Origin: Setoptus koraiensis
Lineage: Eukaryota > Animalia > Arthropoda
Assembly (NCBI GenBank): GCA_048013815.1
Contig: CM106585.1
Span: 5,952,001-6,016,000 of the forward strand
Reading direction: 5' to 3'
Length of the DNA: 64,000 nt
Shown: positions 17,067-31,326 of the stretch, piece by piece
How positions within the stretch are numbered: the first letter of the stretch is position 1
How the letters are laid out: each line of letters starts with the position of its first letter
Notes under the pieces: model-generated
Seen by the model: only the letters and a program-made list of their open reading frames with translations
What the model was told of the DNA's origin: nothing
Database searches by the model: none
Translations under genes and position numbers: made by a program

Positions 17067-21302
<4,236 letters not shown>

Positions 21303-22876
21303 ATTTGTGTGTGTTTTCCTGATTGTGGAAGGGCTCGACTATGTGTGTGTATTATTATTTTCTGTCTATAGAGTTTGTCTAAATGGGATGTGCAATTTGG
21401 ACATTTGCAAAATAGTTTGTTCTGTAGTGATTGTTTGTCTCAATTAAAATATTGATTGATTCTAGTGATGTGTATAAATGACACAATTTATTTGTATCAA
21501 TATGCATATTCTGTCAGGCGCTGCGTTGCCGATAATAGTAGCGTACAGACTTTTCCTCGTAGACGTATTCTTTCCTTCAAATTGAGTTGGTATGATTGAT
21601 GTAGCTTGCGTGTACCATATCGTGCAAAGTTGTACATCATTTACAAGTTACGAAGCCACCAGCATTGATTTACCTGGCTCCTAATTTTCTCAGGTTGATG
21701 AATAATATTTGCTGATATGTCTGTATGTACGTATATAAATGCAATGCGAATCAATCGTTAGAGCTCTGATAGATTTAGATTATTTGCCTGCGCTAATCAT
21801 CGACGGGCCTGCAGCTGTGACAGGGTAAATCTCGGAAATTATTATCTTTCAGATAGTTGTATCGACAGCAGCAGCAGTGATCGTAGAGTAAAGCAGTATT
21901 AATACTCAACACGGTCTAGCCATGGCCGATGTTAAATGAGCTTATATTTATAATTGTGATACAATGCACAATCCAGCACACTTTCAGGATGATACTCTCA
22001 AAATGGCTCTGTTGTAAAATGCACAAATGAGTTTCTTTTCGGGGATCGGCTTCTGCCCTACACACTTTTACACCGATTCCGATAACACGCCTCCCAGCTC
22101 ATATGTTCAGTGCTGTGATCGGCACACGCCCCCGCTTGGCAATTACGCGGACGATACGGGGCATTTGCCGGGTGTCGGCACTTTTCGCGTCGAAAAAATC
22201 TCCCCGACAGCCGTTTCAAATAGACAGCATGACAATTTAGTTTGGTCGTAACATCACAACGCACAAATTGACGCACAAACACAACAACATATCCAATCAA
22301 TGGCACACTCGCGCACACACACACTCATTCAGACAACATTGAGTCAGACGAGAACAAACACGGAGCTCCCAGTGAACATAGGGCGATCTCGTATCTCTTT
22401 GATTATTTATCCTACAATCAATAAATTTCGATTTAAAGCACCGATCTAAACGATAATCAACTAAATAACAATAATAATAATAATCACAAAACAGTATTCG
22501 TCGGAATTGGAATATCACCGGCCCTCTGAGTCATTGTAGAGGAGATACATTGACCAGTTAATTTTATTATCGATATTTAGAGGCGCTACCCTGATGCTAT
22601 CACCATCTACATAGAGTGTGTTTCTTATACATCCCACACGATGTTAACATCATTGGCTCCGCACAATTCTACATCAGAAGACTAGCTTGATATAGATTGC
22701 AGAATCTAAAACAATCGGGCTTTGATTGACAAAATAACTGTGCATATTGCTCACCACTTACTTATTTGGTTACCTCTTATTTATGTGTATATGGCTGAAT
22801 GTTTATAAAGAACACATAGGACATATATGTGTACTTTCTAACACTTGAGATATTGTGATCGTTATCTAACCAAGTC

Positions 22877-23453
22877 ATGTCTCTCGATATTAACAGCGTC
22901 AATATGACTACTACCACAACCAATGACGCAGCTGTCTCATCGACGACATCCACCAATGACAATGTAGCGACCGGACACCATCATACCGCCTCTGCTATAA
23001 ACTCAAATCTCGTAAATAGTACATCCTCCATTCGGGCAATAGACCTAGCACAAACTACCAGGATGGCCACACAAGTTATGGAGTCATACCTTAACGGCAA
23101 GGAGTATCAACATCAACAATCTAATGAATGGAGCAAATGTATAGTTGATGAAGTTCTAGAAAAGATCAAAAGCGCTCAGACTGAGGAGAAGGCAAACCGT
23201 TACAAATACATAGGTGAGTTAAATATGAATGAATTATTCAACCCTTAGTATACAGTGGGCGACAGATATAAAACTTATCTTCAAAATTTCTTCCTTTGCA
23301 GTGAATTGCGCTATTCAGAGGCATGGTTCTGGACTCCAATCTTCCACAGCCTGTTTGTGGAATGTTGCCACCGATGTAGCAACCTGTGTCAAATTCGAAA
23401 ACAAAAATTTACATTGTACGCTAAACATATATGCAATAGCATATGATCTTTGA
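22877..23453 (+). CDS. DYNLT1: Dynein light chain Tctex-type, copy A (162 aa)
   Basis: Exons 22877-23213 and 23302-23453 (88-nt phase-1 intron) give KYI-VNCAIQRHGSGLQSSTACLW, the Tctex-1 fold motif; T/S-rich N-terminal extension; AATAAA at 23468-23473. Confidence 0.88.
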
Positions 23454-23756
23454 AGTAGACTATTACCAATAAATTATTGATTATCTTCAGGACTGTCATT
23501 GAGCACGCCGAGGGCTTTCCAATTGTCTAAGTAATTGGCTTTCCACAACCTGACTGTACCGTCATCGCCGGACGAGGCCAGTATCGTTCCTGTAATGTTC
23601 CAAGATACTCTCCAGACTTGACCTAAGTGGTCGTCAAATTGAGCGACCGTCCTTATTTCAAATTTTTGTGATGTTTGAGATCCGTTCAAGGTCTGGTGGT
23701 CATAATGGGGTGCTTGTAGTGGTTTTATGGTTACAATTTGGACATTTTTTGAGGCA
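22908..23756. repeat. 849-bp direct repeat, copy A (identical to 27069-27917)
   Basis: Manual base-by-base comparison at offset 4161 found no differences, including the DYNLT intron; diverged homologous flanks at about 22862-22907 and 23757-23838. Confidence 0.93.
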
Positions 23757-23840
23757 CTGCCAAGCAAATGATATGATCGGCCGAGGCAAAGGTGAGATCG
23801 TAAACATGCAATCTGTAGCCTTCGCGACAGTGATTTTGAA
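23474..23840 (-). pseudogene. SEH1L: 5'-truncated SEH1 fragment
   Basis: 23474-23756 is identical to the SEH1 3' CDS. 23757-23840 is homologous but frameshifted by a 7-nt deletion and a ~2-nt insertion relative to 27918-28005. No SEH1 N-terminal half upstream. Confidence 0.88.
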
Positions 23841-23916
23841 ACAACTCAGGTAGGATTGTTTGGCTCCAAGATTCCAAGAGGGAACTATCGATGGCGAGCA
23901 CAGCAACTTGATTCTG

Positions 23917-26298
23917 TTAGTATTGGCCAGAGTCGGTCTGATTCTTTGGGGGGAGAGTTAGAGCGACCAACTCGGAAAAAATACTCTGATTCTCACTGAG
24001 ACTGGCGCACAATATTCTTTGGGTATCAAGCAATGCTTGTAGTTCTTCTCCGAAATTTTCTGGCCCGTGGGAACACTCTGTCATAATCATATCAGAGCGA
24101 TTGATCGTTGCCCCATTGACCACTAATTGATTCTGGTTCAATTTTGTATCGGTTTTGCCGTTATTATTGTTAATATTATGACCAACAAAATTATTAATCA
24201 GGAGACTATTATGACGGTGTTGCGCATTAGAGTTTGCAACCATGGTAGACAATTGATCAACAATCGACAACCAATGACCATCCTGGTTGTCCATTAAAAA
24301 GTTTATCGATTTGAGTATTGCGTCACTGCTTTCCATGAATGGCCCCAGTTCTTGTGAGAATAATATTGATTTCAGCAATGCATTCTTTGCATCGTGATAC
24401 CAATTGTCTAGCTTTTCACCAACTAGATCAAGTATTGATTTGTGACTGTTGTCTAATAATTCCTTGAGTTTTTTACAATTGTTGTGAATTCGTAACTTCT
24501 CTAAATGATGAAGTTCACTTTCATTGGCAGTCAATGAACGCGTCGATTTTTGCTTGTGCAAAAATAGCCAACTATCTTTGATTTTTGAACAAAAATGCTC
24601 CGACCTTGGGCGGGACCCCAAAAATCTGCTCGCATATAAGGCCATGTCCGATTGCCATTCTTTGGTGATTCTAGACACAATGTTACTTATCCTCTCCACC
24701 TCGGATTCCTCTAGTTTTTTGAATGTCAGTTGTAACTTCTCGAAGGATGCGATTATTTCGGCCATCTCCTTTTCGACAGTTTGTGCACTGTTAACACCCG
24801 TAATGCTCATGCATCTACTCAAATATTTTGTGGTTTTGTTAGTGTAATCTATTTGATCCTTCATTGAATTGATTACATGATGGCAAGATTTGCGTCTCTC
24901 ATTCAAATACTCGACATTTGTATCTATCAGAGTAAGTATGTGCTGAGGTACTTGAATTATCAGATCAAAATAATTTGAGCATTTGGTAATGTTCCTTTGG
25001 GTGCAATATGCTATTGCAGCACACGCCTTACTTAACTGGGCATCTTGTTCACAATTGACAGAGTTAAGTATCTCAGGAAATTTGATCTGATTGGACGGAT
25101 TAAAATGCGAGGCTTCTATGCTGTTCTGGCCCAAGTCTAACAGAATGATAGGATTGTCTGACGTTGTCGTTGGTAGCTCTCCTATGGACATGTTGCTGTT
25201 TGATATGTCTTTCTTGTTGCAAATCAAAAGTTGATGTTGCATTGGAACAAGGGCTGTTTCCTTTGAAAATTGTTTCAAAGAAGATAGATTGTCCGTTGGT
25301 TGGAGATAAAGTGTATAGTCACAGACCCTGTTAACATAGAAAACATGTATAGGCTTATGAGATAAAATATTGGTGACAGTGCTGAAAAATTGCTCGAAAG
25401 TCCACATCTTTTCAGCGTTGCACTCTAGCAAACCGGCCAATAATGGTGTAATCATGTTCTGAAATGCTATACTTAATCTACAGGTTCGCGGCAAATTTTT
25501 ACTCCATTCAATCTCACCATTCTCTGAATGCTGTATACCCGATATCATGCCAGATTCTTTTTCAGTAGTTATTCTATGCATCATTTCCTTGTTCTTTCTA
25601 CCACCATAGGGCCTAAATGGCAACGAGCCAGTGGCAATGTGAAACAATGTTACGCCAATGCTCCAGAGGTCCACTTTAGCATTGAAGGATTTGCTAGCAG
25701 GCTTGCGTAGGACGGCCCTCTCATACAGATCTGGGTGCAAATATTCCTCTGTTCCATAGAGCGACACAAATTGTTGATCCTCTTCTAGCTCACGGGCAGC
25801 GCCAAAATCCGTCAGTTTGTAAATGGATTGGCCGTCTTCGGAATGAAATCTCATGATATTGCCTGGTTTTAGATCGCGATGTATTATACGCATATCATGT
25901 AAATGTTTCATTCCGGCTGCTAGATGTTTCAAAACTGTTAAGAACTCCATTTCCTCCAACCCAAAACTGTTAGCTGGGTCATCAAGTATATTGAATAGGC
26001 TGCCTCCAGTGCAAAGTTCCATTATGAGCACTTTATGATCAGATTCCTCTTCTATTGCAATCAGTTTGACAATATTCTCATGGTTCACTTTTTTCAAAAC
26101 CTCGAATTCACGCCTCTGCACCTCGTAGGGCCTGAGATGACTCAGCCGATTGAATGCCTTCACCGCCACCAGTTCTCCGGTGGCCTTGTTCATCCCCTGA
26201 TAAACATTACCTGTTGCTCCTTTGCCCAAGACAGCCTGGGTATTCCAGATGTAATTTTTTGAACTAGTGAGATGGTTCTGGTGACTTGACATCGACAT
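23917..26298 (-). CDS. TBK1: TBK1/IKK-epsilon family serine/threonine kinase, ~793 aa, intronless CDS
   Basis: LGKGATG, VAVK, HRDLKPGN, YKLTDFGAARELEEDQQFVSLYGTEEYLHPD, followed by ubiquitin-like and helical scaffold regions. First in-frame ATG at 26298 (the ORF track starts at TTG 26322). TBK1 versus IKBKE cannot be distinguished. Confidence 0.92.
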   Translation of the reverse strand: MSMSSHQNHLTSSKNYIWNTQAVLGKGATGNVYQGMNKATGELVAVKAFNRLSHLRPYEVQRREFEVLKKVNHENIVKLIAIEEESDHKVLIMELCTGGSLFNILDDPANSFGLEEMEFLTVLKHLAAGMKHLHDMRIIHRDLKPGNIMRFHSEDGQSIYKLTDFGAARELEEDQQFVSLYGTEEYLHPDLYERAVLRKPASKSFNAKVDLWSIGVTLFHIATGSLPFRPYGGRKNKEMMHRITTEKESGMISGIQHSENGEIEWSKNLPRTCRLSIAFQNMITPLLAGLLECNAEKMWTFEQFFSTVTNILSHKPIHVFYVNRVCDYTLYLQPTDNLSSLKQFSKETALVPMQHQLLICNKKDISNSNMSIGELPTTTSDNPIILLDLGQNSIEASHFNPSNQIKFPEILNSVNCEQDAQLSKACAAIAYCTQRNITKCSNYFDLIIQVPQHILTLIDTNVEYLNERRKSCHHVINSMKDQIDYTNKTTKYLSRCMSITGVNSAQTVEKEMAEIIASFEKLQLTFKKLEESEVERISNIVSRITKEWQSDMALYASRFLGSRPRSEHFCSKIKDSWLFLHKQKSTRSLTANESELHHLEKLRIHNNCKKLKELLDNSHKSILDLVGEKLDNWYHDAKNALLKSILFSQELGPFMESSDAILKSINFLMDNQDGHWLSIVDQLSTMVANSNAQHRHNSLLINNFVGHNINNNNGKTDTKLNQNQLVVNGATINRSDMIMTECSHGPENFGEELQALLDTQRILCASLSENQSIFSELVALTLPPKNQTDSGQY

Positions 26299-27064
26299 TG
26301 CAGTTACAGGAGTTACTTTCAATCAAATTTGATGAAGATAACAATGAGATAGATTACGTGTTGTATTGTTGTTTCTATTGCACAGTTTAAATGCATCGAC
26401 GTTGTAGATAATCACCAGGAGTCGCTGGTGATTATGAGGTCAGTTTCCGATGTGCTGACGGGTGTAATAATGATGCTGTATTCAAATATTGCCCGTTTCC
26501 AGTCCAATGAATCATCCATAAAGAGAGTGTTGAATATAAACTGTGTAGCAGTGTGTAGTCGTAGAGTGGTGCACAATAGGCTGAAAAAAAGTTAAAATAT
26601 TCAAATGAGCAAAGAGGCTAGAGGAACCTGGATCTTCTCAGCTTTATGAGTGATTTGTTTCGACTAAACTTTGTTGGTTCACACAAGGAAATAATAATAA
26701 TAGTGTGGATTGTAATAATAATACTGAAAAAAAGATGATGCAAAGAACATACCGATCACAATCCTGGATAGGCTACAACAACAACTCATATAACGCTACA
26801 TCGCAATCCTTACAAACAGGTGATAGTCACTCTGATAGCACACCTACGAAATGGTTATTTTTTTTTTCTTACTCATTTAACTGTTCCTGAAAACCACTAC
26901 GGATTCTCCCAATCTCCCGCACACAATTTCGCTAACGCTTATCATTTGCCCGCGTATTCGTAGTGGTCTCCTGTCCGTACCCATGGTGCGGACATGGAAT
27001 AAACAGCTGTGAATTCAAGTCTTTATCTGACAGAGTCACGTCTCTCGATATCAACAGCGTCAGT

Positions 27065-27614
27065 ATGGCTACTACCACAACCAATGACGCAGCTGTCTCA
27101 TCGACGACATCCACCAATGACAATGTAGCGACCGGACACCATCATACCGCCTCTGCTATAAACTCAAATCTCGTAAATAGTACATCCTCCATTCGGGCAA
27201 TAGACCTAGCACAAACTACCAGGATGGCCACACAAGTTATGGAGTCATACCTTAACGGCAAGGAGTATCAACATCAACAATCTAATGAATGGAGCAAATG
27301 TATAGTTGATGAAGTTCTAGAAAAGATCAAAAGCGCTCAGACTGAGGAGAAGGCAAACCGTTACAAATACATAGGTGAGTTAAATATGAATGAATTATTC
27401 AACCCTTAGTATACAGTGGGCGACAGATATAAAACTTATCTTCAAAATTTCTTCCTTTGCAGTGAATTGCGCTATTCAGAGGCATGGTTCTGGACTCCAA
27501 TCTTCCACAGCCTGTTTGTGGAATGTTGCCACCGATGTAGCAACCTGTGTCAAATTCGAAAACAAAAATTTACATTGTACGCTAAACATATATGCAATAG
27601 CATATGATCTTTGA
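27065..27614 (+). CDS. DYNLT1: Dynein light chain Tctex-type, copy B (153 aa if started at ATG 27065)
   Basis: Exons 27065-27374 and 27463-27614. The ATG used by copy A is ACG here (27038-27040). Expression unknown. Confidence 0.7.
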
Positions 27615-27917
27615 AGTAGACTATTACCAATAAATTATTGATTATCTTCAGGACTGTCATTGAGCACGCCGAGGGCTTTCCAATTGTCTAAGTAATTGGC
27701 TTTCCACAACCTGACTGTACCGTCATCGCCGGACGAGGCCAGTATCGTTCCTGTAATGTTCCAAGATACTCTCCAGACTTGACCTAAGTGGTCGTCAAAT
27801 TGAGCGACCGTCCTTATTTCAAATTTTTGTGATGTTTGAGATCCGTTCAAGGTCTGGTGGTCATAATGGGGTGCTTGTAGTGGTTTTATGGTTACAATTT
27901 GGACATTTTTTGAGGCA
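27069..27917. repeat. 849-bp direct repeat, copy B (identical to 22908-23756)
   Basis: Same comparison as copy A. Confidence 0.93.
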
Positions 27918-28630
27918 ATACCAAGCAAATGATATGATCGGCCAATATAAGGGGCAAAGGCAAGATCGTAAACAGGATCTGTAGCGCTTGCAACAACATC
28001 AATTTTGGACCATTTTCTAGATCTTTCATTGTAATCGTATATAAGAACTTTGGGTGTTGGATTATTGGCATCGTCGCAACCGACTGCAAGCATGGGAGCA
28101 TGAATCCTTGATTGGTTCCACGTGATAGAAGAGCAAGCCATTTTACAGTTAAATTCATCCTTCATCGTCCATTGGCTTAAATTCATAATGTCTGGGGCCT
28201 CATAAACTCTCATATGACCGTCACTAGCGCATGTAACGAGCATAAGGCCTAGGTGTTTTGGAGCAAACCTGATATCGGTCAATGAGGTCCTGCTATCGAC
28301 TAGTGTTGTTCTCTTAGCCCAATGTGATTGATTTCTTTCATCTACAATTTCTTCCCAAACAACGGCCGTCCTATCAAACGAGCATGTAGCTAAGACTTGG
28401 CCGAATTCCGGATGAGCCCACGTGACTTTCCATACGCTGCCCGAATGTGATTTCCAGCTAGATTTTAATTTCCAAGTGCCACTTTCATCTAGATCCCAAA
28501 CTTTAACACTTTGGTCGCTAGAGCAAGTAGCCAGCCTTATCCCGTAATGATCATAAGCCACATCATGTATTAGATCCTTGTGGTCGGCTTGAATGTTTTT
28601 CGCTATAAATATTGGCGCTACCTTATCCAT
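27635..28630 (-). CDS. SEH1L: Nucleoporin SEH1 (WD40; Nup107-160 complex/GATOR2), 331 aa, intronless
   Basis: [66 protein letters not shown] and [20 protein letters not shown]. Confidence 0.96.
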
Positions 28631-29523: not shown

Positions 29524-31326
29524 ATGGATTCTGACCTGCTCATAATCAGACCATTAGGTGCCGGCCAGGAGGTTGGACGAAGCTGTATTGAGGTAGATTT
29601 CAAAGGAAAAAAACTCCTCCTCGACTGTGGTATACATCCTGGCTTGAGTGGTCTAGGAGCTTTACCTTTTGTGGAGGCTATTGATATCGAAAACATAGAT
29701 TTATTACTTGTCACTCATTTCCATCTTGACCATTGCGGAGCACTGCCATGGTTCCTCACCAAAACCACATTCAAAGGAAGATGTTTCATGACACACGCAA
29801 CCAAAGCAATCTACCGTTGGATCTTGGCAGATTACATCAAAGTGTCCAATAACTCCACAGAACAGATGTTATACACCGAGGCAGACCTCGAAGCTTCCAT
29901 GGAAAAGATTGAAGTCGTCAATTTTCACGAGCAAAAAGAGATTGCTGGCGTGAAATTTTGGTGCTATAATGCAGGTCATGTTCTTGGTGCTGCTATGTTT
30001 ATGATAGAGATAGCAGGTGTTAAAATACTATATACAGGCGACTTCTCGCGCCAAGAAGATCGTCACTTGATGTCTGCTGAAATACCTCAAATCAAACCAG
30101 ACGTGCTCATCACCGAAGCTACATATGGAACCCACATTCATGAAAAACGAGAGGAACGCGAGGCACGGTTCACTAATATTGTTTATGACACTGTGACTAG
30201 AGGGGGTAGATGTTTAATACCTGTGTTTGCATTGGGTAGGGCTCAAGAACTTCTACTTATTCTAGATGAATATTGGTCACTGCATCCAGAACTTCACGAA
30301 ATTCCTATATACTACGCGTCTTCTCTAGCCAAGAAATGTATGTCAGTCTATCAAACTTACGTCAATGCCATGAATGACAAGATAAAACGCCAGATAGCAA
30401 TCAACAATCCTTTTGTATTTAAACACATATCAAATCTCAAATCAATTGATCACTTCGACGATGTCGGACCGTGTGTGGTGATGGCATCCCCAGGTATGTT
30501 ACAATCTGGCCTTTCGAGGGAATTATTTGAGACTTGGTGTCCGAACCCTCGTAACACGTGTATTATTGCCGGTTATTGCGTCGAGGGCACATTGGCCAAA
30601 CATATTTTATCCGAGCCAGACGAAGTATTAGCCATGGATGGTTCAAGGTTGCCAAGGAAGTGTCAAGTAGAATACATCTCCTTCTCTGCTCACACTGATT
30701 ATAGACAGACTAGTGAGTTCGTGAGAGCACTGCACCCTCCGCATATAATTCTGGTGCATGGTGAAGCTAATGAAATGTCAAGACTAAAATCTGCCCTTAC
30801 TGCACAATATCAGGATGATGAAAATCCTATAGTTGTACATAATCCTAAGAATACTATGGCAGTCGAGCTACATTTTCGCGGTGAGAAAACGGCCAAAGTA
30901 ATTGGAAATCTTGCTATAGAGGCACCAACACCTAAGAAGAAAATCAGCGGTGTATTAGTCAAGAGGAACTTCAACTATCATCTTATGGCTACTTCTGATT
31001 TGAACAAGTATACTGATATGTCGGTCTCAACGATCAGCCAAAGATTGAGCGTTTCGTTCAATGGGACCTTTGAACAATTGAACGAATGTCTGAAGACTCT
31101 AGACATATTGCAAATGGAGTCAAAGTCCGGTCTGCCCACTATAAGAGTAGCTGAAAGGGTTTTAGTGACACTCAATATAAAGAGTAGAGTTGCATATTTG
31201 GATTGGAATGCTGGGCCTGTAGATGATCAATTCGCAGATGTTGTGATAGCTTTACTAATGAAATATTCACCAAAACTTACAAACATCAAGGCAGAGAAGA
31301 TTGATGACGAAGTCGAGGGTGAATAA
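29524..31326 (+). CDS. CPSF3: Cleavage and polyadenylation specificity factor subunit 3 (CPSF73 endonuclease), 600 aa, intronless
   Basis: [23 protein letters not shown] metallo-beta-lactamase motif, [20 protein letters not shown] and SFSAHTDY; AATAAA at 31322-31327 overlaps the stop. Confidence 0.97.

What the first reader, a model, noticed from the sequence alone, without database searches (positions are those of the whole stretch)
22862..28005. TBK1/IKKe kinase bracketed by 849-bp identical direct repeats with decayed edges: a potentially excisable 4,161-bp cassette under apparent gene conversion
Seen: 22908-23756 equals 27069-27917 with no differences, including an intron and, in copy A, a truncated SEH1 fragment. 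The homologous edges are clearly diverged: 4 transitions in 35 bp on the left (22873-22907), and substitutions plus frameshifting indels over ~80 bp on the right. At the left-edge rate about 90 differences would be expected in the core. Copy A carries the full DYNLT start and copy B the full SEH1. Inference: an older ~970-bp duplication whose centre was recently homogenised. A crossover between the repeats would delete TBK1 as a 4,161-bp circle and leave an intact DYNLT-SEH1 tail-to-tail pair, or would tandemly duplicate TBK1. An innate-immune-type kinase may therefore be copy-number variable without harming its neighbours.
Basis: partly seen in the sequence, partly recalled or inferred. Interest (0 to 1): 0.8.

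Follow-up and report, generated by a model that had tools for sequence, protein, structure and literature searches.

The report
TBK1 copy inserted between converting repeats
In a tiny plant-feeding mite, an extra copy of the TBK1 kinase gene was inserted into a tail-to-tail gene pair, and the roughly 1 kb of target DNA duplicated on each side has since been kept identical in its centre by gene conversion; this is real and neatly documented, but the processes are ordinary.

Summary
22908-23756 equals 27069-27917 exactly (849 bp, offset 4161), and both edges are diverged.

It is not an assembly artefact. In two independent public datasets all four repeat/flank junctions exist, and the core forms one unbroken contig at about twice the flank depth.

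A sister lineage (L005; SEH1 protein 99% identical, dS 0.42) has left flank-DYNLT-SEH1-right flank with no TBK1. TBK1 plus about 0.7 kb upstream (about 23846-27019) is therefore an insertion, flanked by a duplication of about 0.97-0.99 kb of its target. Other eriophyoid mites keep TBK1 elsewhere (RRM-TBK1-SNARE).

Edge divergence against 0/849 in the core supports homogenisation by gene conversion. The right end of the identical tract differs between datasets (849, 875, 906 bp), always with copy A made B-like.

Copy A keeps the ancestral DYNLT start codon (ACG in copy B), and an RNA-like contig links the left flank to spliced DYNLT. A second TBK1 version (3-7% different, mostly synonymous) sits at single-copy depth, so a paralogue exists elsewhere.

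No TBK1 loss or gain allele was found; excision remains only possible. The scan noted a similar duplication-insertion and a conversion-homogenised palindrome elsewhere in this genome.

The parts
21303..22858 (.). Left flank ('A-left'): the ancestral upstream region of DYNLT, lying between the DPP-like gene and DYNLT
   Evidence: Collinear with sister-lineage contig L005 (73% identity over 1.6 kb). An RNA-like contig of X7 runs from here into DYNLT.
22859..23845 (.). Repeat copy A. Exact core 22908-23756; diverged edges 22859-22907 and 23757 to about 23845
22877..23453 (+). DYNLT/Tctex-1 gene, copy A, with the ancestral ATG. Exons 22877-23213 and 23302-23453; intron 23214-23301
   Evidence: Pfam Tctex-1 matches profile positions 3-50 in exon 1 and 54-95 in exon 2. 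The intron is confirmed by a GT..AG joint that skips 4249 = 4161 + 88 bases. The ATG at 22877 is conserved in L005.
23474..23785 (-). Dead 3' fragment of SEH1 (last ~100 codons) inside copy A, downstream of TBK1 on the same strand
   Evidence: tblastn matches SEH1 residues 229-331 at 98% identity. It is cut off by indels further up.
23846..27019 (-). Inserted segment of about 3.17 kb, absent from the sister lineage: TBK1 plus 71 bp downstream and about 700 bp upstream
   Evidence: L005 passes from copy-A-type left flank to copy-B-type right flank without it. It has no other copy in the window and no poly(A), terminal inverted repeats or transposase.
23917..26322 (-). TBK1/IKK-epsilon-type kinase, a single 801-codon ORF (the first ATG lies a few codons in)
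   Evidence: Pfam Pkinase, TBK1_ULD and TBK1_CCD1 all score above their cut-offs. Human TBK1 structures match at E = 7e-137, with the VAVK, HRDLKPGN, DFG and SLYGTEEY motifs kept.
27020..28010 (.). Repeat copy B. Exact core 27069-27917
   Evidence: The core contig sits at about twice the flank depth in X1 and X2.
27065..27614 (+). DYNLT copy B. The frame is intact from the shared ATG, the ancestral upstream ATG is now ACG, and the ancestral promoter is missing
   Evidence: No RNA-like contig covers its upstream region in X7.
27635..28630 (-). Full-length nucleoporin SEH1
   Evidence: 99% identical to P0121 and 87% to Fragariocoptes setiger SEH1.

Best explanation
Shown: this is a real duplication-insertion in an eriophyoid (phytoptid-like) mite genome. 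Ancestrally, DYNLT (+) and SEH1 (-) lay tail to tail, directly downstream of the DPP-like gene's intergenic region.

Shown and inferred: a DNA copy of TBK1 with about 0.7 kb of upstream sequence (about 3.17 kb in all) was inserted. About 0.97-0.99 kb of the target, running from just upstream of the DYNLT start codon to codon ~225 of SEH1, ended up on both sides. The mechanism is inferred. It was either a one-step event (staggered-break fill-in or replicative template switching) or a tandem duplication followed by insertion at its junction. Because of the duplication both host genes survived. The left copy keeps promoter plus DYNLT, with a dead SEH1 tail. The right copy keeps full SEH1, with a promoter-less DYNLT.

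Inferred: since then, non-allelic gene conversion between the two direct copies has repeatedly erased differences in the centre (849-906 bp identical). The last ~50-90 bp at each end are seldom reached and have diverged. Conversions that would damage a live gene, such as the indels of the copy A edge entering SEH1 or the ACG of copy B entering DYNLT-A, would be removed by selection. This fits the observed direction on the right side, where copy B converts copy A.

Possible only: the same repeats are a substrate for unequal crossing-over, which would delete or duplicate TBK1. No such allele was seen.
For: - Exact 849-bp identity with diverged edges.
- In X1 and X2, from different studies, separate contigs exist for left flank into core, TBK1 side into core, core into TBK1 side and core into right flank.
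- In both, the core is one unbroken contig. In X2 its depth is 252 against 116.6, 111.8 and 116.7 for the flanks. In X1 it is 165.5 against 72, 69.6 and 77.6, with the fourth junction contig (left flank) at 109.4.
- The core contig ends at 27943 in X1 and 27974 in X2, against 27917 in the window. In X2 the contig on the copy A side starts with the B-type letters ATATAAGG. Copy A is therefore B-like over different lengths in different datasets.
- Sister-lineage contig L005 has left flank-DYNLT (intron present)-SEH1-right flank and no TBK1.
- TBK1 lies in a DEAD-RRM-TBK1-SNARE block in two other eriophyoid-like contigs. SEH1 has no TBK1 within 10 kb in Fragariocoptes, and none on the L007 contig, which ends just past SEH1.
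- Dating: SEH1 dS between window and L005 is 0.42 and left-flank noncoding identity is 73%. The A-B edges differ by 8/49 on the left and about 0.1-0.2 per site on the right, so the duplication is old relative to 0/849.
- Polarised edge changes lie on both copies on the left and almost only on copy A on the right.
Against: - No long read spans both copies, so the phase of the four junctions is inferred from contigs and depth.
- All read evidence comes from de Bruijn contigs, which drop rare variants.
- The edges are short (49 and ~60-90 bp), so dating is rough. Part of the right-edge divergence could be junction 'mess' made at the time of insertion.
- In X5 one contig runs through copy B unbranched and the left flank is almost uncovered. 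This may be uneven coverage or a different structure.
- The donor of the insert was not seen, so the one-step and two-step origins cannot be separated.
Confidence: 0.75

Rival explanations
1. A very young duplication-insertion with no gene conversion. On this reading the centre is identical because the event is recent, and the edge differences were introduced by error-prone synthesis or end-joining at the junctions when it formed.
For: The differences cluster within ~50-90 bp of the junctions and include small indels. The last ~25 bp on the right are barely alignable.
Against: The left edge carries derived changes on both copies. The right limit of identity differs stepwise among the window, X1 and X2, which needs later exchange between the copies. 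The two TBK1 versions differ by 3-7%, mostly at synonymous sites. If the insert was copied from that paralogue, the event is not young.
Confidence: 0.1
2. The sister lineage (L005) once had the TBK1 insertion and lost it by crossing-over between the repeats. That would be the excision the first reader proposed, already realised.
For: L005 is exactly the predicted recombinant, with the copy-A left flank and the copy-B right flank. The right-edge divergence of copy A (up to about 0.2 per site) approaches the per-lineage neutral divergence (about 0.2).
Against: A-B edge divergence (0.13-0.2) is below the window-L005 neutral distance (0.33-0.42). More distant relatives have neither the DYNLT-SEH1-TBK1 linkage nor TBK1 at this place. 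Ancestral absence is therefore the simpler reading.
Confidence: 0.1
3. An assembly or polishing artefact. Either only one copy exists, or the two real copies differ and were made identical by short-read polishing of a noisy long-read assembly.
For: The candidate source assembly type, noisy long reads from a pool of wild mites with polishing (PMC11920263, candidate only), is prone to this. The window differs from the X1 contigs at 23757 and 23759 and in TBK1.
Against: The four junction contigs and an unbranched core contig at twice the flank depth appear in two different studies. A fixed difference between copies would split the core contig.
Confidence: 0.03
4. A dedicated mobile cassette: a transposon or recombinase-driven element that carries TBK1.
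For: Direct repeats bracket a gene-sized insert.
Against: The repeats are host genes duplicated from the target. The insert has no transposase, terminal inverted repeats, LTRs or poly(A), and no other copy in the window.
Confidence: 0.02

Closest known systems
Low-copy repeats (segmental duplications) that flank genes, undergo interlocus gene conversion and mediate non-allelic homologous recombination; for example the CMT1A-REP pair around PMP22 (own knowledge; general reviews PMC3966225, PMC3924818, PMC4467073)
   Same: Two direct copies bracket a gene. Their sequence is homogenised by copying between paralogous sites and tract ends vary. They are a potential substrate for reciprocal deletion or duplication.
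   Different: The scale is about a thousandth (0.85-1 kb repeats, 4.2 kb unit). The repeats are the duplicated target of the insertion itself and each contains one live and one dead gene part. No deletion or duplication allele has been observed.
Duplication-insertion rearrangements made by replicative template switching (FoSTeS/MMBIR) or fill-in of staggered breaks (own knowledge)
   Same: Foreign DNA is inserted between two copies of a stretch of the target.
   Different: The mechanism is inferred only. The donor junctions and any microhomology could not be examined because the donor locus was not available.
Paired LTRs of a retrotransposon, which convert each other and recombine to leave a solo LTR
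   Same: Direct repeats flank an insert. Recombination between them restores a single copy.
   Different: The repeats are host sequence rather than part of the element, and there are no retroelement features.
TBK1/IKK-epsilon (Drosophila ik2) kinases
   Same: Kinase, ubiquitin-like and coiled-coil scaffold domains are present, with the catalytic motifs and the activation-loop serine kept.
   Different: This is an extra copy at a derived location. Its expression and role in this mite are unknown.

Membership tests
TBK1/IKK-epsilon kinase family | Protein kinase domain with intact catalytic motifs (VAVK lysine, HRD, DFG, activation-loop Ser in SLYGTEEY) | tested here: met
   Pfam Pkinase E = 7e-53. 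The alignment to human TBK1 (4jl9) shows all of these motifs.
TBK1/IKK-epsilon kinase family | Ubiquitin-like domain and coiled-coil scaffold domain after the kinase domain | tested here: met
   TBK1_ULD scores 32.9 bits against a cut-off of 31. TBK1_CCD1 scores 56.1 bits against a cut-off of 25.9. The match to TBK1 structures covers residues 20-621.
Tctex-1 / DYNLT dynein light chain | Complete Tctex-1 domain | tested here: met
   Exon 1 matches profile positions 3-50 and exon 2 matches 54-95 of 95. The splice is confirmed by a contig joint.
Nucleoporin SEH1 | Full-length WD40 propeller orthologous to named SEH1 proteins | tested here: met
   87% identical to Fragariocoptes setiger SEH1 and 63-65% to vertebrate SEH1 over 96-99% of its length.
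Low-copy repeat pair under interlocus gene conversion | Two real copies in direct orientation in the genome | tested here: met
   Four junction contigs and a core at twice the flank depth in two studies.
Low-copy repeat pair under interlocus gene conversion | Identity in the core far above that expected from the age of the duplication, with patchy or variable tract ends | tested here: met
   0/849 against 8/49 and about 0.1-0.2 per site at the edges. Tract ends fall at 849, 875 and 906 bp in three datasets.
NAHR-mediated copy-number variable locus | Deletion and/or duplication alleles with breakpoints inside the repeats | tested here: inconclusive
   No DNA contig joins the left flank to the right flank. 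The X7 joint also removes the intron, so it is RNA-like. The unbranched contig in X5 and its missing left flank are unexplained. Contigs cannot show rare alleles.
Transposable element or mobile cassette | Element-encoded enzyme, terminal repeats of the element itself, and multiple insertions | tested here: not met
   The insert has no such ORFs or termini, and the window holds no second copy.
Retrogene | Intron loss relative to the parent gene, a poly(A) tail, and short target-site duplications | tested here: not met
   TBK1 is a single ORF in the relatives too. There is no poly(A) downstream, and about 700 bp of upstream DNA came along.

The most novel reading that the evidence does not exclude
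The repeat pair could work as a population-level on/off or dosage switch for a second, functional TBK1 paralogue. On this reading conversion keeps the repeats recombination-competent, TBK1-less and TBK1-duplicated chromosomes segregate in nature (the odd X5 pattern might be a first hint), and the two TBK1 paralogues exchange sequence, which would give the mosaic versions seen between datasets.
Probability: 0.07. Interest if true: 0.6.

Novelty: new member of a known kind. Interest (0 to 1): 0.3.

Why it matters
This is a compact case in which a gene insertion, the rescue of both disrupted host genes by target duplication, and later concerted evolution of the duplicated target can all be read from sequence. 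An ancestral-state sister lineage and differences between datasets in tract length support the reading. It also shows that a strongly streamlined mite genome still gains genes by DNA-level duplication, here a second TBK1. None of the processes is new, and the proposed excision or copy-number variation is not demonstrated.

Tried and rejected
- **Second copies in the window.** I looked for a second TBK1, or for extra copies of the insert, within the window. None was found.
- **Neighbours from other mites.** The neighbours of TBK1 in relatives (RRM, SNARE, DEAD and others) are not in the window.
- **WD40 gene next to TBK1 in L009.** I checked whether it was SEH1, which would have pointed to an old linkage. 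It is not.
- **X7 joint as a deletion allele.** I rejected this because the joint also removes the 88-bp intron at GT..AG, and the contig ends near the SEH1 start, as expected for RNA.
- **Second TBK1 version from a contaminating sister species.** I rejected this because no second DYNLT or SEH1 contig is laid on the core in X1 or X2, although the core is about 92% identical to L005 and the threshold was 90%.
- **Second TBK1 version as an allele.** I rejected this because each version has about the full single-copy depth and their sum equals the two-copy core.
- **Exact proteins of this species in the protein collection.** They are not there; the best SEH1 hit is 99% and the best TBK1 hit 80%. 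Contigs of the species itself could therefore not be fetched.
- **Notes search for the other TBK1 locus.** This returned only a title.
Full report
**1. The observation**

At an offset of 4161 bases the window matches itself without a single difference from 22908 to 23756 (= 27069-27917, 849 bp).

- Left of the core, homology continues for 49 bp with 8 differences (22859-22907).
- Right of the core there are two substitutions (23757, 23759), a 7-bp indel, a 2-bp indel and increasingly dense substitutions. The alignment fades at about 23820-23845.
- BLAST reports 22859-23819 against 27020-27985 at 97.6% identity.

**2. Gene content**

The organism is an acariform mite with a compact, intron-poor genome.
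- TBK1 hits are best to unnamed eriophyoid-like contigs, then to Halotydeus, Dinothrombium and Tetranychus.
- SEH1 is 87% identical to that of the phytoptid Fragariocoptes setiger.
- The scan's index says the genome has two pieces and about 775 windows. A published 47-Mb, two-chromosome phytoptid assembly made from a pool of wild mites (PMC11920263) is a candidate source. I did not verify this.

The genes around the repeat are as follows.

| Coordinates | Strand | Feature |
|---|---|---|
| 17838-21302 | - | DPP-like gene |
| 22877-23213 + 23302-23453 | + | DYNLT/Tctex-1 copy A |
| 23474-23785 | - | last ~100 codons of SEH1 |
| 23917-26322 | - | TBK1/IKK-epsilon-type kinase, one ORF |
| 27065-27614 | + | DYNLT copy B |
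| 27635-28630 | - | full SEH1 |
| 29524-31326 | + | CPSF3 |

TBK1 has kinase, ubiquitin-like and coiled-coil domains and intact catalytic motifs. Both DYNLT copies have an intact frame from the shared ATG. The upstream ATG at 22877 is ACG in copy B.

**3. Is it real?**

I laid Logan contigs of four public runs on 22400-28399.

In X1 and X2, which come from different studies, the picture is the same.
- One contig comes in from the left flank and stops 30 bases into the core (at 22937).
- Another comes in from the TBK1 side and stops 30 bases into copy B (at 27098).
- One unbroken contig with no differences covers the core.
- Separate contigs leave towards the TBK1 side and towards the right flank.

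Depths are as follows.

| Run | Left flank | TBK1-upstream side (B-left) | TBK1-downstream side (A-right) | Right flank | Core |
|---|---|---|---|---|---|
| X2 | 116.6 | 111.8 | not listed | 116.7 | 252 |
| X1 | 109.4 | 72 | 77.6 | 69.6 | 165.5 |

Two copies that differed anywhere inside the core would split that contig. The duplication and the identity of the cores are therefore real in two independent datasets. A misassembly or polishing collapse is very unlikely.

**4. What the structure is**

The nearest relative in the protein collection is a Logan contig, L005. Its SEH1 protein is 99% identical, SEH1 dS is 0.42, and the noncoding left flank is 73% identical.

In a three-way alignment, L005 follows copy A and its flank on the left, as far as the start of the DPP-like gene. 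It follows copy B and its flank on the right. It contains the DYNLT intron and has no TBK1.

The arrangement left flank-DYNLT-SEH1-right flank is therefore the ancestral one. The window's lineage gained about 3.17 kb (about 23846-27019: TBK1, 71 bp downstream and about 700 bp upstream) together with a duplication of about 0.97-0.99 kb of the target.

Other relatives agree that TBK1 is a newcomer here.
- Two eriophyoid-like species have DEAD-RRM-TBK1-(Bcl-2)-SNARE.
- A third has yet another context.
- SEH1 of Fragariocoptes has neither DYNLT nor TBK1 within 10 kb. SEH1 of L007 lies at the end of its contig, with neither gene upstream.

The insert has no poly(A), terminal repeats, transposase or second copy in the window. 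TBK1 is a single ORF in the relatives too, so this was a DNA-level event rather than retroposition or transposition.

The duplication explains why an insertion into codon ~225 of SEH1 did no harm.
- The left copy keeps the ancestral promoter and start of DYNLT.
- The right copy keeps SEH1 whole.
- Each copy carries one live and one redundant or dead half.

**5. Homogenisation**

Neutral divergence between the window and L005 is about 0.33-0.42. The two copies differ by 8/49 at the left edge. Over the confidently aligned part of the right edge they differ by about 0.1-0.2 per site.

When polarised with L005, left-edge changes lie on both copies: about 2 on copy A and about 4 on copy B, including ATG to ACG. 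Right-edge changes lie almost all on copy A, whose SEH1 tail is dead while that of copy B is coding.

The duplication is therefore a substantial fraction as old as the split from L005. Dozens of differences would be expected in the 849-bp core, above all in the dead SEH1 tail and the intron. None is found.

The right limit of identity is not fixed.
- In X1 the core contig runs to 27943 (875 bp), and the contig on the copy A side carries the B-type letters at 23757 and 23759.
- In X2 it runs to 27974 (906 bp), and the contig on the copy A side begins with the B-type 7-bp insertion, seen as the loose end ATATAAGG.

Three nested tract ends, always copy B overwriting copy A, are what recurrent gene conversion predicts. 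One long conversion followed by allelic recombination would also produce them. A one-off mutagenic junction would not.

**6. Expression hints**

Run X7 gives one contig with no differences that joins 22495-23211 to 27461-28399.
- The skip of 4249 equals 4161 + 88, so the contig lacks the DYNLT intron at GT..AG.
- It ends close to the SEH1 start codon.

It therefore behaves like an RNA-derived contig of the overlapping DYNLT and SEH1 messages. It is not a TBK1-less chromosome.

It enters DYNLT from the left flank, and nothing covers the region upstream of copy B. This suggests that copy A is the transcribed DYNLT. The inference comes from a contig, not from raw reads.

**7. A second TBK1**

Across about 23990-26380, X1 and X2 each hold two sequence versions. 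One is close or identical to the window and one is 3-7% different.
- Each version has about single-copy depth, for example 113.5 and 115.9 in X2.
- Their sum equals the depth of the two-copy core.
- No second version is laid on the flanks or the core, so this is neither an allele nor a contaminating sister species.

Of the 38 codons touched by the 40 best-supported differences, 31 changes are synonymous and 7 are not. Both versions have therefore been under purifying selection.

A second, intact TBK1 paralogue thus exists elsewhere in these genomes and is the likely donor or sibling of the inserted copy. The first stage also noted a decayed TBK1 on the other chromosome (s1-330850). I could not inspect it.

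The relations between versions are mosaic. X1 has no contig identical to the window at 24040-24562 (14 and 37 differences). X5 and X7 carry the near version there but the far version at about 24700-25800. This could reflect exchange between paralogues, population haplotypes, or a mosaic consensus in an assembly made from pooled mites. It stays unexplained.

**8. What is not shown**

No DNA contig joins the left flank to the right flank, and flank depths in X2 are equal. There is therefore no sign of TBK1 loss or gain there.

X5 is odd. One contig runs from 26352 through copy B to beyond 28399 without branching, and the left flank is almost uncovered. With a small, unevenly covered dataset this proves nothing, but it is worth a look.

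Crossing-over between 849-906 bp of perfect direct identity is certainly possible. It would regenerate the ancestral arrangement plus a 4161-bp circle, or a tandem TBK1. That remains a prediction.

**9. Comparison and verdict**

The closest known kind is a pair of low-copy repeats that flank a gene, convert each other and can mediate non-allelic recombination. Here the pair is in miniature and was created by a duplication-insertion.

The scan's notes mention another duplication-insertion (563-bp repeats around 4.5 kb; s1-347662) and a conversion-homogenised palindrome (s1-314233) in the same genome. Both processes may be common there, though I did not test those notes.

The finding is real and well explained, but it is a new member of a known kind. 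I score interest at 0.3.

Noticed in passing
window 23990-26380 (TBK1): Public datasets hold two TBK1 versions that differ by 3-7%, each at single-copy depth. The versions combine as mosaics across datasets, and X1 has no contig identical to the window at 24040-24562. This points to a paralogue elsewhere and possibly to exchange between paralogues, or to a mosaic consensus in the assembly.
   Followed up: partly
window 22400-23900 in run X5: In X5 the left flank and copy A are almost uncovered (depth 0-4 against about 20), while one contig crosses copy B unbranched. This is either uneven coverage or a structural variant.
   Followed up: no
window 23453-23474 and 27614-27635: The stop codons of DYNLT and SEH1 lie only about 20 bp apart, tail to tail, so their 3' UTRs must overlap as antisense. 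One RNA-like contig covers both genes. DYNLT exon 2 is unusually conserved against L005, even at silent sites.
   Followed up: partly
window 22400-22494: The reads tool skipped this stretch as a repeat. A low-depth X5 contig shares 22495-22728 and then diverges, so part of the left flank may be a dispersed repeat.
   Followed up: no
window 17838-21302: A DPP-IV-like gene forms a single 1154-codon ORF with a long low-complexity N-terminal extension (Asn and Ser runs). Only the DPPIV_N domain was detected in this ORF.
   Followed up: no
L001/L008 (relatives): The block DEAD helicase-unknown-RRM-TBK1-(Bcl-2)-SNARE is conserved between two eriophyoid-like contigs from different samples. It is useful as the expected ancestral TBK1 locus.
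   Followed up: partly
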